Shown here: one piece after another, positions 13,065-43,211 of the stretch
How the letters are laid out: each line of letters opens with the position of its first letter
Numbering within the stretch: position 1 is the first letter of the stretch
Sequence record: NC_042060.1
DNA length: 64,000 nt
Reading direction: 5' to 3' (one strand)
The notes under the pieces: generated by a model
Database searches by the model: none
Told to the model about the DNA's origin: nothing
The model's input: only the letters and a program-made list of their open reading frames with translations
Made by a program: the position numbers and the translations under genes

Positions 13065-13553
13065 TTAAACCGATGAATCTATCCACGGTGGATAAACAAC
13101 CACAATCTGGTTAGGCATGTGATTAGACCAATCTTCAATGATAGTTCTAACATCAGAGAAATCTAATCCACCATTAGCACACCCTAGAGGTGGTATGATA
13201 ATTTTCCAATCTGGATGAATACAGTCTTCTTCATTTTCCGCAGAATCCGATACGTTCTCCATCATCCACTCTAGACCACGTTCAATGAAACTAATTTGAG
13301 ATGGGTTCCGCCAGTTATCCTTAGTAGGAAACATCATGAAACGTTTACCATCGGATGCTTTGTAAATAACCGGATTACCAATAGTAATAATTCTCTTTTT
13401 GCAATCGTGTTTGTATCTTTCAAAAAGTTCAGGATACTTTTCTTTAAACGATTTGGCTAAACCAGCGCCCATGACGCCAACAACATTAACAGTGATTAGA
13501 TAAAGATCACCAGGTACATTGAATATATCTTTACCTATAATAAATTCAGCCAT
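13065..13553 (-). CDS. Macrodomain protein, DarG-like ADP-ribosylhydrolase (gp104-like)
   Basis: TVNVVGVMGAGLA, FPTKDNWR and IPPLGCANGGLDF motifs. Confidence 0.88.
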   Translation of the reverse strand: MAEFIIGKDIFNVPGDLYLITVNVVGVMGAGLAKSFKEKYPELFERYKHDCKKRIITIGNPVIYKASDGKRFMMFPTKDNWRNPSQISFIERGLEWMMENVSDSAENEEDCIHPDWKIIIPPLGCANGGLDFSDVRTIIEDWSNHMPNQIVVVYPPWIDSSV

Positions 13554-40729: not shown

Positions 40730-40758
40730 AAACCCTCCCGTAATGGGAGGGTTTTATG
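40730..40758. terminator. Bidirectional terminator
   Basis: aaccctccc/gggagggtt stem followed by ttatg. Confidence 0.8.
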
Positions 40759-40826: not shown

Positions 40827-41195
40827 TTAATATCCTTCATTAAGTAGTTCTGCTAGAGCACGTGCCTGTGAAATATCAGTAGAAGCAAAAACATCAGAAA
40901 GATAGTTATCATGTTCTTTTGCATTCTGACGCAATTCATCCATTAGATGTTTATTAGATACCGCCCATACTTTCCACAGATTTTTATAATCATCATATTT
41001 GGGATTATACCCGTCTAGTGGTGGTTTTCCTTTACCAGCTTTCCAATGGTTGGAGTATATGCGATATCCTTTACAATCTAACTGCCAAGCTTCCTCAATT
41101 GTTCTGCCATCAGGAAGCCTTGCGTAAAGAGCCGAGAATCTTTTGTCACCAACAGATGAACATTCATATCCTCCTCGGCGCTTCCACTGATATAT
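40827..41195 (-). CDS. Unannotated 122-codon ORF with no canonical start; possibly NADAR-like
   Basis: Open frame IYQWKRRGGYECSSVGDKRFSALYARLPDGRTIEEAWQLDCKG...ARALAELLNEGY; begins at an ATA overlapping the polymerase TAA. Confidence 0.7.
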   Translation of the reverse strand: MYQWKRRGGYECSSVGDKRFSALYARLPDGRTIEEAWQLDCKGYRIYSNHWKAGKGKPPLDGYNPKYDDYKNLWKVWAVSNKHLMDELRQNAKEHDNYLSDVFASTDISQARALAELLNEGY

Positions 41196-43111
41196 TACTT
41201 TGGGTTCTTATAGGTATTAATAAACTTCTCTAGCAGGGTGTCCATTTTAGGAGCACCCATGATCTTCTGTGTGATTTCAATAGCATTAACCCTACCACCT
41301 GTTAAGTTTACGCCAACTTCACGGCGATGGTGTTCACTAATTCCTTCCATCATTGAGAATTCCATCACACATGTTTCACGTGCAATATTTAGAATCTGAC
41401 TAACGTTAGGATATGTCGACACGATGTCAAGGTCGGCGATATGACAGAAGATTAAGGTTTTATAATTCGGTAAATCTTTAACACACTGCAATCCATTTGG
41501 ACCTGCCATGTATGATGGTAGTGTAACAATCCAATCATTATGGCCAATAACATATTGATCAAGTTCATGCACCATCTGATCTGAACTTGAACCAATGACA
41601 CATGGCTCTGGTCTATTCAAATACCAGAAGTGCATATCGTCACATAGTCGTTTTGGGTTAGAACTAAAGTTCTTATAGTCAGATGCCTTAGAGAATAGAC
41701 TTATAGAGCGACCAAGGTCATTTACTTGTTCATCAAGTTGTTCTAGTCGAATGGAGTCGATGATGTTATAAAGACCATATTTGATTTTATGCTTAGTCTG
41801 CATCTCACGGTGCCAATCGATACCACCAAGATGTGCAGTTTCTTTAAAGGTTAACTTACCAAATTCCATTACATATCTAATAGAATCACCATAGGTAAAG
41901 TTATCATTTAATATAAAATCATCCACCGGTACCCATTCATTACTACCTACATTTTTAATATATTTAGTAATAACGCCGCCTGGTCGGTCAACTAGTTGTT
42001 TATTAAAACCTTCAATAAAATCTTCTAAGTCCTTATCATTTTTAATGGTCGTGGATTTATCGATGTTTAGTTCTTTTCTAAGAATAGACTCTAACCGATA
42101 GTTAGGATCACGTCCTTTAGCTAATCGAGTTACTCGATAAGTTGACATAGAATCGATACATTGAAAACTAGAGGGTGCTGTAATCCAATGCCATTGATCC
42201 TCCGGTCCTTTAGATTTAGTGACCCCAGATGCAGTGGTGGTCATAGGTTCATCAATCTTAAAATGGAAATACCTATAATTCTTAGGTACCGATGGATCAG
42301 AAAAAACATCAGCTGGATTAACACCATAGTGTTCTAATGTTTTTAAGATTCTACCAATGTCGAAGCTAATATTCCAGAATGCGAAGAAATCTGGTTTCCA
42401 GGTATGTAGTCGTTTAAAACATTCAATAATAATATCTACTGGTGTTTCAACAACCATTACTTCAATATCTAGACCACGTTCTTTAATTAGATGTGATAAT
42501 ACCTCTTCTTTTTGTGCTTGTTCTAATGTCTCTTTCACTGGATCTTCAATATCACTAACCCATCGTTTTAAATAGGCTAAGAAAGCTTTGTTCTTATGTG
42601 TAACTGACATACAGATAATCTGACCATCGTTCTCAGCTTCATAAACGTTGGTTTCGATGTCACCGCCAGCAACAGTGTTTAGAGAGATTAGACCAGGATA
42701 ACGTTCTTGATAATCATGCTTCAGATAACAGGTTGAACTAACATCACTGCCATATAGGTAAGGACTACGCGCTAGTTGACGAAGAGATCTAGCCGAATAG
42801 TCACCTAGGATTTTACTAATCTTACGTTTCATGTCAATTTGAGTTGACATGTATTTAACTAAGTTACGCTCATATTCGTAATCTTTCTTTTCTTTATGGT
42901 TACGCATTCCTTTTGAGGTAATCCAAAAAGGACGCTGGTAGTTTTCCCACATCCTTAAATTATTTGCAGTTGTACCATCTTCAAAATGAATTCGTTCTTT
43001 AACGAAATGCGCATCTGTAAACTTACCAAATTGATCAGTACAATAAGTAATATGTTTGGCTTCAATGCCCTTAATCTTTTTCTTATTTGTAACCTGTTGT
43101 TCATTAGACAT
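41195..43111 (-). CDS. Split family-B DNA polymerase, exonuclease/N-terminal subunit (gp82-like)
   Basis: ExoI DIET, ExoII WNISFD, ExoIII YNIID, motif A DIVSTYP; motifs B and C absent. Confidence 0.88.
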   Translation of the reverse strand: MSNEQQVTNKKKIKGIEAKHITYCTDQFGKFTDAHFVKERIHFEDGTTANNLRMWENYQRPFWITSKGMRNHKEKKDYEYERNLVKYMSTQIDMKRKISKILGDYSARSLRQLARSPYLYGSDVSSTCYLKHDYQERYPGLISLNTVAGGDIETNVYEAENDGQIICMSVTHKNKAFLAYLKRWVSDIEDPVKETLEQAQKEEVLSHLIKERGLDIEVMVVETPVDIIIECFKRLHTWKPDFFAFWNISFDIGRILKTLEHYGVNPADVFSDPSVPKNYRYFHFKIDEPMTTTASGVTKSKGPEDQWHWITAPSSFQCIDSMSTYRVTRLAKGRDPNYRLESILRKELNIDKSTTIKNDKDLEDFIEGFNKQLVDRPGGVITKYIKNVGSNEWVPVDDFILNDNFTYGDSIRYVMEFGKLTFKETAHLGGIDWHREMQTKHKIKYGLYNIIDSIRLEQLDEQVNDLGRSISLFSKASDYKNFSSNPKRLCDDMHFWYLNRPEPCVIGSSSDQMVHELDQYVIGHNDWIVTLPSYMAGPNGLQCVKDLPNYKTLIFCHIADLDIVSTYPNVSQILNIARETCVMEFSMMEGISEHHRREVGVNLTGGRVNAIEITQKIMGAPKMDTLLEKFINTYKNPK

Positions 43112-43181: not shown

Positions 43182-43211
43182 CATAAAGCCTCCCCTAGGG
43201 GAGGCGATATG
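43182..43211 (-). terminator. Terminator
   Basis: gcctccc/gggaggc stem with CATA and TATG flanks. Confidence 0.75.

What the first reader, a model, noticed from the sequence alone, without database searches (positions are those of the whole stretch)
40827..41204. Start-less ORF behind the DNA polymerase, reachable by a -1 frameshift at C-CCA-AAG
Seen: the apparent 440-nt gap between the polymerase stop and the terminator holds a protein-like 122-codon frame whose first ATG is at codon 85. The last polymerase codons are AAC CCA AAG TAA. C-CCA-AAG (41198-41204) is an X-XXY-YYZ slippery heptamer with the shift-prone A-AAG, and a -1 slip gives CCC AAA GTA ATA TAT CAG TGG, exactly this frame. Alternative: TAATA is a mutated or non-canonical version of a TAATG coupled start. 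The segment FSALYARLPDGRTIEEAWQLDCK resembles the NADAR pattern FSNFY..DG..T.EH..Q..K (inference). NADARs remove guanine-linked ADP-ribose added by DarT1. If correct, an ADP-ribose eraser could be tethered to the replicase, complementing the DarG-like gene.
Basis: partly seen in the sequence, partly recalled or inferred. Interest (0 to 1): 0.8.

Follow-up and report, generated by a model that had tools for sequence, protein, structure and literature searches.

The report
Frameshift extension of phiKZ DNA polymerase
In phiKZ-type giant phages, a conserved 122-codon gene with no start codon sits just behind one subunit of the DNA polymerase. It is most likely made by the ribosome slipping back one base at the polymerase's last two codons, which would attach a small, uncharacterised enzyme-like domain to a fraction of the replicase.

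Summary
The window is a phiKZ-type phage, and the feature lies on the minus strand. The polymerase N-terminal subunit (gp82 homologue, 638 aa) ends AAC CCA AAG TAA. From C_CCA_AAG the -1 frame stays open for 123 more codons, with no ATG, GTG or TTG before codon 85.

The start-less part is under strong purifying selection within the phiKZ clade. Across non-redundant relatives, 23 of 24 junctions with this ORF in the -1 frame carry C_CCA_AAG, G_GGA_AAG or A_AAA_AAG in the polymerase frame. These are the three heptamers reported as highly shift-prone in E. coli. Seventeen of the 23 have no start codon near the ORF's N-terminus.

Three other relatives encode polymerase and this domain as one continuous ORF, and three more separate them only by an in-frame TAG. 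I conclude that a -1 programmed frameshift makes a 761-aa polymerase-X fusion (confidence about 0.8). No proteomic or ribosome-profiling evidence was found, and no stimulatory RNA structure was detected.

The NADAR assignment is not established. Sequence and profile tests are negative. Fold similarity is below threshold but enriched for NADAR, and the domain's fusion partners (DUF4326, SLOG) match those of NADAR. I found no prior report of this frameshift.

The parts
41195..43111 (-). Zero-frame ORF for the DNA polymerase N-terminal subunit (phiKZ gp82 / DNAP-N homologue), 638 aa, including its TAA stop.
   Evidence: ORF list. phrog_3011 'DNA polymerase', E 1e-241. 97-100% DNA identity to phiKZ PHIKZ082 and PA7 gp298. 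gp82 is the NTD/exonuclease/part-palm subunit of a split B-family polymerase (bioRxiv 10.64898/2026.09.30.755723).
41198..41204 (-). Slippery heptamer C_CCA_AAG, covering the last two sense codons of the polymerase plus the preceding C.
   Evidence: Read directly. Conserved in 12 non-redundant relatives, replaced by G_GGA_AAG in one, with A_AAA_AAG serving in 10 others. It is the only in-frame CCC/GGG/AAA-AAAG among 16,919 codons of the window's long ORFs. C_CCA_AAG is listed as highly shift-prone in E. coli (PMC5009743).
41195..41197 (-). Zero-frame TAA stop immediately 3' of the heptamer. It may act as a 'shifty stop' context.
   Evidence: Read directly. A stop follows the heptamer directly in every C_CCA_AAG / G_GGA_AAG junction except 201phi2-1, where it comes one codon later. 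A stimulatory role is inferred, not shown.
40827..41198 (-). The -1-frame extension: GTA, then ATA at the family's Met position, then the 122-aa X domain, 123 sense codons in all plus TAA. The predicted trans-frame product is 638 + 123 = 761 aa.
   Evidence: Translation. Full-length match to phrog_9995. Family alignment with N-terminus M-[YF]-x-W-x-R aligned on the ATA. AlphaFold2 pLDDT 96.4 with residues 3-5 forming a strand of the fold. Within the phiKZ clade, 19 synonymous and 4 conservative non-synonymous variable codons.
40827..40943 (-). The 38-aa CDS annotated in public records (PHIKZ082.1 / PA7 gp297). It is only the C-terminal fragment of X, starting at the first in-frame ATG.
   Evidence: Annotations. 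phrog_33573 (a 38-aa profile) matches residues 86-123 of the 123-aa query. Codons 1-84 upstream are also under purifying selection.
40730..40754 (-). Intrinsic-terminator-like hairpin ending the polymerase-X transcription unit. It lies between X and the convergent virion-protein gene.
   Evidence: Scan. No terminator-like site on the minus strand lies between the polymerase stop and X.
43188..43205 (-). Terminator-like hairpin upstream of the polymerase gene, marking the 5' boundary of the unit.
   Evidence: Scan. Consensus match only.

Best explanation
The 122-codon ORF (called X here) is the C-terminal extension of the polymerase N-terminal subunit. It is reached by programmed -1 ribosomal frameshifting.

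Proposed mechanism:
- With CCA in the P site and AAG in the A site, the two tRNAs slip back one base to CCC and AAA.
- The zero-frame TAA that follows is then not read.
- Translation continues GTA ATA TAT CAG TGG and onward for 123 codons.
- Most ribosomes terminate and make the 638-aa subunit. A fraction make a 761-aa polymerase-X fusion.

In the phiKZ clade this is the only evident route to X, because there is no start codon.

X is a compact, conserved, enzyme-like domain. Elsewhere it occurs as a stand-alone early-region phage protein, inside giant multidomain phage proteins, and fused to DUF4326, SLOG, RNase H, AlkB-like and helicase domains. The most likely role is counter-defence or repair chemistry on nucleotides or modified DNA bases, delivered at the replisome. 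It may be a divergent NADAR-like N-glycosidase.

What is shown and what is inferred:
- Shown: the anatomy, the conservation, the selection and the natural fusions.
- Inferred: the slippage itself, its efficiency and the biochemical activity.
For: 1. No start codon. No ATG, GTG or TTG occurs in the X frame before codon 85. The family N-terminus aligns exactly on the ATA that overlaps the polymerase stop.
2. Purifying selection without a start codon. Six phiKZ-clade variants all keep CCCAAAGTAATA. Of 23 variable codons, 19 are synonymous and 4 are conservative. In codons 1-84 the split is 12 synonymous to 3 non-synonymous, against a roughly 1:3.7 ratio of synonymous to non-synonymous sites.
3. 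Heptamer conservation. 23 of 24 non-redundant junctions with X in the -1 frame have X_XXA_AAG in the polymerase frame, inside the short stretch from which a shift reaches X (388 codon positions). The split is 12 CCCAAAG, 1 GGGAAAG and 10 AAAAAAG. The background in the rest of the polymerase ORFs is 2 in 11,243 positions. The one exception (L075) has an ATGA overlap start.
4. Selection acts on the nucleotides. The codon before CCA encodes N, P, S, L, A or V but always ends in C. Where the tail is G-K, the codon before ends in G.
5. Seventeen of the 23 have no canonical start near the N-terminus. The Met-position codons include ATA, ACA, ACT, GTA and GTT. In the A_AAA_AAG group the polymerase frame runs on past X's N-terminus, so its stop lies 4-79 nt downstream of it.
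6. These three heptamers are the ones reported as highly shift-prone in E. coli (PMC5009743).
7. Natural single-ORF fusions exist:
   - P0345, 698 aa: DNAP-N at 30% identity plus X at 49%, on two contigs, next to a PhiKZ-type capsid gene.
   - P0266, on locus L084: polymerase residues 550-630 at 53% identity plus X, with the junction reading ...E-P-K-D-K-P-L-Y-T-W.
   - L058.
   Three further relatives have X in frame after a single TAG with no start codon.
8. In the window's 40 long ORFs, in-frame slippery heptamers are strongly avoided (50 observed against 113 +/- 11 in codon shuffles). The polymerase-end CCCAAAG is the only one of the three strong types (shuffles give 5.9).
9. No minus-strand terminator lies between the polymerase and X.
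Against: - There is no direct evidence. I found no trans-frame peptide, ribosome-profiling data or reporter data, and no ribosome-profiling study of phiKZ among the papers searched.
- No convincing stimulatory element was found. The consensus fold downstream of the heptamer is weak (-4.6 kcal/mol, covariation -0.3), and the window sequence folds no better than shuffles (z -0.67). By eye, Shine-Dalgarno-like upstream motifs are inconsistent.
- The host's tRNA-Lys repertoire was not checked. A tRNA-Lys with anticodon CUU would lower A_AAG slipperiness.
- In six relatives an ATG or GTG sits at X's N-terminus, so independent initiation also exists in the family. Weak initiation or re-initiation at AUA in phiKZ cannot be excluded as a second route.
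- L058's fusion differs from its relatives by one extra C in a C-run, so it could be an assembly error.
- A sister group has X in the +1 frame, often without a start codon. The -1 model does not explain that group.
Confidence: 0.8

Rival explanations
1. X is a separate protein made by termination-reinitiation (translational coupling). A non-canonical AUA overlapping the polymerase stop (UAAUA) serves in place of the ancestral UAAUG. The heptamer is conserved only because the polymerase tail ends in Pro-Lys.
For: PhiPA3 and L023 have TAATG. PA1C has GTGA. L065 has TAG followed by GTG. L075 has ATGA. So coupling with a real start codon does occur in this family, and the stop overlaps or abuts X's first codon in the C_CCA_AAG group. 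X is a stand-alone protein in many other phages.
Against: The Met-position codons ACA, ACT, GTA and GTT are not near-cognates of AUG. In the ten A_AAA_AAG junctions, X's N-terminus lies 4-79 nt upstream of the polymerase stop with no start codon at all. The tail sequence before P-K is not conserved, yet the preceding codon always ends in C, CCA is never another Pro codon and AAG is never AAA. Where P-K becomes G-K, the heptamer stays slippery (L034). In-frame fusions show that X functions while attached.
Confidence: 0.12
2. X is a recently inactivated gene in the phiKZ clade (ATG to ATA start-codon mutant) that is no longer expressed.
For: The closest outgroup, PhiPA3, has ATG where phiKZ has ATA. 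Public records annotate only a 38-aa remnant.
Against: The ORF is intact in all six phiKZ-clade variants compared here, which span 96-100% DNA identity. Its substitution pattern is that of a coding sequence under constraint (19 synonymous, 4 conservative). Start-less but intact copies recur in several other lineages: HPP-Temi, Phabio, Noxifer, L024, L027, L031, L034 and the A_AAA_AAG group.
Confidence: 0.03
3. X is reached from a short frame-0 ORF. The AGGAGG plus ATG at about 41166 (annotated as a 29-aa CDS in some records) would start translation, followed by a -1 slip of tRNA-Lys on ACA-AAA-G. Alternatively the apparent shift is a homopolymer sequencing error there.
For: A strong Shine-Dalgarno-like GAGGAGG lies 5 nt before an ATG in frame 0, and an A-run follows where a -1 slip would enter the X frame. 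Some GenBank records call this small CDS.
Against: Homologues align with X from residue 2-4 onward, upstream of that ATG. The GGAGGA encodes the nearly invariant G-G of W-x-R-x-G-G-Y-E. The sequence across this region is 100% identical in 33 or more independently sequenced genomes. The AlphaFold2 model uses residues 3-11 as strands of the fold.
Confidence: 0.01

Closest known systems
E. coli dnaX tau/gamma programmed -1 frameshift (A_AAA_AAG)
   Same: Both are -1 tandem slippage on an X_XXA_AAG heptamer in a replisome gene, giving two products from one gene in a set ratio. Ten relatives here use the identical A_AAA_AAG.
   Different: In dnaX the shift leads almost at once to a stop and makes the shorter product, and it uses an upstream Shine-Dalgarno sequence and a downstream hairpin (my knowledge of the system). 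Here the shift bypasses the stop and adds a 123-aa domain, and no such stimulators were found.
Tail assembly chaperone G/GT frameshift of lambda-like phages (G_GGA_AAG)
   Same: A conserved -1 frameshift near the end of the upstream ORF yields a C-terminally extended minor product. The heptamer is kept while protein sequences diverge, and related phages sometimes use other recoding solutions.
   Different: That case is a structural or assembly function in tail genes. Here the upstream gene is a catalytic subunit of the replicative DNA polymerase and the added part looks like an enzyme.
Retroviral gag-pol expression (frameshift in some lineages, stop-codon readthrough in others)
   Same: Related genomes join the same two coding units by different recoding devices. 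Here these are -1 frameshift, in-frame TAG, direct fusion and an unresolved +1-frame arrangement.
   Different: Different hosts and translation systems. In this family readthrough of the TAG is only inferred from the absence of a start codon.
NADAR / YbiA-fold ADP-ribosyl-guanine hydrolases (for example the DarT1-NADAR antitoxin and phage gp30.3)
   Same: The motifs line up in the same order: FSxF ... DG ... E-x-x-Y-Q ... K, an acidic residue directly after the last strand, and a terminal helix. NADARs are the commonest named family among sub-threshold Foldseek hits (TM up to 0.57). The fusion partners are the same (DUF4326, SLOG; against PMC9503650). NADAR domains of RNA viruses are likewise embedded next to the polymerase (PMC9503650).
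   Different: X is about 30-40 residues shorter. No Pfam NADAR hit (0 of 60 members at E<=1; 0 of 72 at E<=1e-4). hhalign probability is 0.2%. No Foldseek hit passes E 0.001 outside the X family itself.

Membership tests
Programmed -1 ribosomal frameshift site (tandem slippage) | An X_XXY_YYZ heptamer in the zero frame whose -1 frame is open into the downstream coding sequence | tested here: met
   C_CCA_AAG at 41198-41204, with the -1 frame open to 40827.
Programmed -1 ribosomal frameshift site (tandem slippage) | The heptamer is conserved across diverged relatives, including synonymous positions, beyond what the protein requires | tested here: met
   23 of 24 -1-frame junctions carry it, against a background of 2 in 11,243. 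The preceding codon's third base covaries with the heptamer (C with CCA, G with GGA) while the amino acid varies.
Programmed -1 ribosomal frameshift site (tandem slippage) | The downstream frame is a real coding sequence that lacks its own initiation signal | tested here: met
   No ATG, GTG or TTG for 84 codons. Purifying selection. Full-length family match.
Programmed -1 ribosomal frameshift site (tandem slippage) | A stimulatory element (downstream hairpin or pseudoknot 5-9 nt away, or an upstream Shine-Dalgarno-like sequence) | tested here: inconclusive
   RNAalifold gives a weak stem starting 7 nt after the heptamer (-4.6 kcal/mol, almost no covariation). The single-sequence z-score is -0.67. 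A zero-frame stop abuts the heptamer, which may substitute as a 'shifty stop' (inference).
Programmed -1 ribosomal frameshift site (tandem slippage) | The trans-frame protein is observed | not testable with these tools
   No proteomic or ribosome-profiling data were reachable, and the literature searches found none.
NADAR / YbiA superfamily | A significant match to the family profile (Pfam PF08719) or a profile-profile match | tested here: not met
   0 of 60 members at E<=1 and 0 of 72 at E<=1e-4 hit PF08719. hhalign probability is 0.2%, P 0.3-0.4.
NADAR / YbiA superfamily | [quoted passage not shown] | tested here: inconclusive
   The model (pLDDT 96) has four long helices, some short ones and small strands at residues 3-5 and 98-100. 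The best PDB TM score is 0.44, to NADAR 8bau, at E 6. In BFVD, 11 of the 45 non-family hits are NADAR-named proteins (TM 0.28-0.55, E 0.7-9).
NADAR / YbiA superfamily | A conserved charged catalytic residue in the last strand (Glu, Asp or His; PMC11125620) | tested here: inconclusive
   An invariant D101 directly follows the last strand (98-100). Its equivalence to the NADAR residue rests on a non-significant alignment.
NADAR / YbiA superfamily | Hydrolysis of ADP-ribose from guanine or other N-glycosidic conjugates | not testable with these tools
   This needs a biochemical assay.
PHROG 9995 / the 'X' family of about 120-130-aa phage proteins | A full-length profile match with the conserved motifs | tested here: met
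   phrog_9995 E 1.7e-55, residues 3-123 on profile positions 2-123 of 124. 28 invariant columns are shared with 59 homologues.
Translationally coupled downstream gene (overlapping stop-start such as TAATG) | An initiation codon (ATG, GTG or TTG) overlapping or adjacent to the upstream stop | tested here: not met
   The window has TAATA. The in-frame codons are GTA ATA. The feature is met in PhiPA3, L023, PA1C, L065 and L075.

The most novel reading that the evidence does not exclude
Nucleus-forming jumbo phages use recoding (-1 frameshift, readthrough or fusion, depending on lineage) to fit a set fraction of their replicative polymerase with a minimal NADAR-like base-deconjugating enzyme. This enzyme would remove ADP-ribose or similar bulky adducts, placed by DarT-type or related host defences, from template DNA directly at the replication fork. 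It would be a replisome-tethered counter-defence or repair module.
Probability: 0.3. Interest if true: 0.9.

Novelty: new member of a known kind. Interest (0 to 1): 0.78.

Why it matters
phiKZ is the model nucleus-forming jumbo phage, and its split DNA polymerase has just been solved structurally without this extension (bioRxiv 10.64898/2026.09.30.755723).

If the frameshift is real:
- The replicase has a fourth, unannotated component.
- Public annotations of more than 60 genomes, which give a 38-aa or 29-aa fragment or nothing, are wrong at this locus.
- The phage offers a clean natural case of -1 frameshifting at a heptamer abutting a stop codon in Pseudomonas.

The X domain is widespread: at least 800 representative proteins at 50% clustering. 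It is embedded in giant multidomain phage proteins and is uncharacterised. Its tethering to a polymerase gives a concrete, testable hypothesis about its substrate, namely modified DNA at the fork.

The switching between frameshift, in-frame stop and fusion among relatives is also a useful comparative system for how recoding sites evolve.

Tried and rejected
- **Frame-0 SD+ATG at about 41166 followed by an A-AAA-G slip or a homopolymer error.** Rejected because homologues align upstream of it and the sequence is 100% identical in 33 or more genomes.
- **Pfam on X and on 60 + 72 family members.** Only chance hits (GAUT_1, Chitin_bind_4) and no NADAR.
- **PDB sequence search with the family profile.** Only a marginal, implausible uL3 match at E 0.006.
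- **hhalign of X against a YbiA-type NADAR alignment.** Tried with a 60-sequence alignment and with one of 256 X-domain segments, under several settings; probability 0.2%. The NADAR alignment is not diverse (62% identity or more), so sensitivity was limited.
- **Foldseek against PDB.** Nothing at E <= 0.001.
- **Conserved RNA structure after the heptamer.** Not convincing. An apparent G-C to A-T compensatory pair between PhiPA3 and phiKZ did not hold in other relatives.
- **Literature searches.** phiKZ + frameshift, PHIKZ082.1, gp82 and ribosome profiling returned no report of this event.
- **P0376 (838 aa) as a polymerase fusion.** It has no similarity to the polymerase.
- **General TAG recoding in the in-frame-TAG relatives.** Their 604- and 608-aa polymerase ORFs contain no internal TAG, so there is no sign of a reassigned code.
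- **tRNA genes in the window.** None found.
Full report
**What is there**

The window is a phiKZ-type (Phikzvirus) genome. The region is 100% identical to PA7, KTN4, SL2 and many others, and 97.4% identical to phiKZ itself, where it covers PHIKZ082 / PHIKZ082.1 / PHIKZ083. The feature lies on the minus strand.

- The polymerase ORF 41195..43111 (638 aa, phrog_3011) ends AAC CCA AAG TAA.
- From the C at 41204 the -1 frame reads CCC AAA GTA ATA TAT CAG TGG and continues to a TAA at 40829-40827. The other two frames are closed.
- The only ATG/GTG/TTG-initiated ORF in that frame is 40827..40943, 38 aa. Public records annotate exactly that fragment; some also call a 29-aa out-of-frame CDS, and others annotate nothing.
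- A terminator-like hairpin follows at 40730-40754, and another precedes the polymerase at 43188-43205. None lies between the polymerase and the ORF on the minus strand.

**The ORF is a real, full-length family member**

The 122 residues after the ATA, called X here, match phrog_9995 end to end (E 1.7e-55).

- A word-indexed search found 500 homologues, mostly stand-alone proteins of 120-130 aa with no Pfam domain.
- An exhaustive profile search found 832 representative proteins.
- In the alignment the family N-terminus, M-[YF]-x-W-x-R-x-G-G-Y-E-C/V-S-S, falls exactly on the phiKZ ATA. There are 28 invariant columns.
- AlphaFold2 gives a very confident compact model (pLDDT 96.4), in which residues 3-5 already form a strand. 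The annotated 38-aa fragment cannot be the functional unit.

**The start-less part is under selection**

Six phiKZ-clade variants (96-100% DNA identity) all retain CCCAAAGTAATA and an intact 122-codon frame.

- Of 23 variable codons, 19 are purely synonymous and 4 are conservative replacements.
- Within codons 1-84, before the first ATG, the split is 12 synonymous to 3 non-synonymous.
- The ORF has only about 78 synonymous sites against 288 non-synonymous sites.

This excludes a dead gene and a 38-aa-only product.

**Junctions in relatives**

I collected polymerase-X junctions from annotated phages, IMG/VR and metagenomes, and analysed them with an HMM of X.

*X in the -1 frame.* Among 24 non-redundant junctions of this type, 23 carry an X_XXA_AAG heptamer in the polymerase frame, within the short stretch from which a -1 shift reaches X. 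There are 12 C_CCA_AAG, 1 G_GGA_AAG and 10 A_AAA_AAG in 388 permissible codon positions. The rest of the same polymerase ORFs contain 2 in 11,243 positions. The single exception (L075) has a canonical ATGA overlap start.

- The zero-frame stop follows the heptamer directly; in 201phi2-1 it comes one codon later.
- The codon at X's Met position is ATG (PhiPA3, L023) or GTG (201phi2-1, Viktualia, L065). In PA1C it is ATA, with a GTG one codon upstream that overlaps the TGA stop.
- It is ATA in the phiKZ clade, ACA in HPP-Temi, L024 and L031, ACT in L027, GTA in Phabio and GTT in L034.
- The polymerase tail before P-K varies in length and sequence. The preceding codon encodes N, P, S, L, A or V yet always ends in C.
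- In L034 the tail is G-K, the heptamer is G_GGA_AAG and the preceding codon ends in G.

*A_AAA_AAG group.* The polymerase frame runs on past X's N-terminus, so its stop lies 4-79 nt downstream of it. There is no start codon near the N-terminus, and the heptamer sits 0-13 codons before the conserved W/F-x-R.

Overall, 17 of the 23 have no ATG, GTG or TTG near X's N-terminus. The data show the opposite.

**The heptamers are the known strong ones, and the phage otherwise avoids them**

In the window's 40 long ORFs (16,919 codons), in-frame X_XXY_YYZ heptamers are less than half as frequent as in codon shuffles (50 against 113 +/- 11). The polymerase-end C_CCA_AAG is the only instance of the three strong types, where shuffles give 5.9 (2% of shuffles gave one or none). 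A_AAA_AAG alone is expected 4.7 times and observed 0 times.

**Natural fusions**

- P0345 (698 aa) is a single ORF. Residues 29-531 are homologous to the window's polymerase (30% identity, E 4e-39 and 1e-10, reaching query residue 621). Residues 558-676 are X (49% identity, E 3e-35). It was seen on two contigs, beside a PhiKZ-type major capsid gene.
- P0266 (236 aa; locus L084, on a contig that also has a PhiKZ_gp85 homologue) joins polymerase residues 550-630 (53% identity) to X in one frame. The junction reads GAA CCC AAA GAC, which translates ...E-P-K-D-K-P-L-Y-T-W.
- L058, a 201phi2-1-like contig, also has one continuous frame. It differs from its relatives by one extra C in the C-run, so an assembly error cannot be excluded.
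- Three further relatives (L036, L055, L061) have X in the polymerase frame after a single TAG (always TAG-CTN), with no start codon. Where the whole polymerase ORF is held (L036 and L055), it contains no other in-frame TAG.

So X works as a C-terminal appendage of this polymerase subunit in several lineages, and lineages differ in how the two are joined.

**Mechanism proposed**

tRNA-Pro on CCA and tRNA-Lys on AAG re-pair on CCC and AAA. The TAA is skipped, and 123 further codons are read, giving a 761-aa product alongside the 638-aa one. The anatomy, conservation, selection and fusions are shown. The slippage itself and its efficiency are inferred.

I could not find a stimulator. The consensus fold downstream is weak and almost without covariation, and the window sequence folds no better than shuffles. 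The stop codon abutting the heptamer may play that role, as in the 'shifty stop' concept cited in PMC5009743, but this is inference. The host's tRNA-Lys set was not examined, and no tRNA genes occur in the window.

**Where X would sit**

[quoted passage not shown] The paper does not mention a frameshift or an extension. X would be attached within 2-3 residues of that C-terminus.

**What X might do**

By sequence it is not a NADAR.
- No Pfam NADAR hit: 0 of 60 members at E<=1 and 0 of 72 at E<=1e-4.
- Profile-profile probability is 0.2%. The NADAR alignment I could build had low diversity.

By fold the result is ambiguous but not empty.
- Nothing in the PDB passes E 0.001. The highest TM score (0.44) is to a NADAR-ADP-ribose complex, 8bau.
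- In BFVD, after four true homologues, 11 of the remaining 45 hits are NADAR-named proteins (TM 0.28-0.55) and 5 are DUF4326.
- The non-significant hhalign alignment is seeded on FSAL/FSNF. It is collinear through DG, E-x-x-Y-Q and the terminal helix.
- An invariant Asp (D101) directly follows the last strand. NADARs carry their distinguishing catalytic Glu, Asp or His in the last strand itself (PMC11125620).

By context:
- X is fused to DUF4326 (17 of 72 multidomain members), YAcAr/cpYpsA SLOG domains (6), RNase H (2), DUF488-N3a (2), an AlkB-like dioxygenase and a guanylate kinase, and to a PIF1-like helicase.
- It is embedded in proteins of 2,000-6,000 aa.
- X also occurs as a stand-alone gene within the first 7 kb of N4-like Achromobacter and Delftia phage genomes.

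I read this as a counter-defence or repair enzyme of the nucleotide/ADP-ribose network, possibly a minimal NADAR-like fold, with about 0.4-0.5 confidence for the NADAR-like part. A macro-domain protein is annotated at 13065-13553 in the same window. I did not test any link to it.

**Rivals**

- *Re-initiation at AUA.* It cannot explain ACA, ACT, GTA or GTT, or the A_AAA_AAG group, but it may coexist in phiKZ.
- *Pseudogene.* Excluded by selection and by recurrence in other lineages.
- *Frame-0 SD+ATG route, or a sequencing error.* Excluded by the family alignment and by the region being 100% identical in 33 or more genomes.

**Novelty**

The mechanism class is well known. I found no report of this instance, and current annotations miss it. 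It would add a recoded accessory domain to the replicase of a heavily studied model phage.

Noticed in passing
L008, L009, L016, L019, L021, L022, L026, L029, L056, L059, L060 (D6 / Psa21-like relatives): In a sister group, X lies in the +1 (equivalently -2) frame and overlaps the polymerase end by 17-20 nt. All share GAAAAGAAG in the polymerase frame (E-K-K). The Met-position codon is GTG or TTG in 5 and CTG, ACG, CGG or TCG in 6, and L059 has no in-frame start at all. A -2 slip of tRNA-Lys from AAG to AAA would enter the X frame, but this is speculation.
   Followed up: partly
L036:1966, L055:1954, L061:1819: Three relatives have X in the polymerase's own frame after a single TAG, always followed by CTN, with no start codon. 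The 604- and 608-aa polymerase ORFs of L036 and L055 have no other in-frame TAG. This suggests programmed TAG readthrough rather than a reassigned code.
   Followed up: partly
L003 (PhiPA3) 634-1209; L007 (HPP-Temi) 1-601; L084 1550-3711: The polymerase N-subunit gene is itself interrupted in some relatives. In PhiPA3 the annotated CDS stops about 575 nt before the true C-terminal 85-aa segment, which is unannotated. In HPP-Temi an HNH endonuclease gene lies just upstream of the last polymerase segment. In L084 the subunit is split into a 482-aa protein and a 236-aa protein, the latter fused to X.
   Followed up: partly
window 41107-41196 (29-aa CDS in KEN19-type records) and 40827-40943: Gene callers place two small 'hypothetical proteins' inside X. 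One is out of frame, triggered by the GGAGG that encodes the conserved G-G. The other is the 38-aa tail. Both look like annotation artefacts propagated through dozens of phiKZ-like records.
   Followed up: yes
proteins P0256, P0274, P0282, P0329, P0354, P0356 and others: The X domain is embedded in giant proteins of 2,000-6,146 aa with few or no Pfam matches. They resemble the 'polyvalent' multi-effector proteins of phages and conjugative elements. P0243 appears to contain three X-like stretches.
   Followed up: partly
window 13065-13553 (-): A 162-aa macro-domain protein is annotated here in PA7 RefSeq.
   Followed up: no
window, 40 long ORFs: In-frame X_XXY_YYZ heptamers are strongly depleted across the phage's genes (50 observed against 113 +/- 11 in codon shuffles). 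A_AAA_AAG is absent although about 4.7 are expected.
   Followed up: yes
L037-L049, L068-L074, L077: A more distant clade of polymerase N-subunits (about 50% identity) mostly ends ...GCGGCATAA (a few end differently, for example L074 with GTGAATTAA) and has no X gene within 1.5 kb downstream. The polymerase-X link is therefore confined to part of the family.
   Followed up: no
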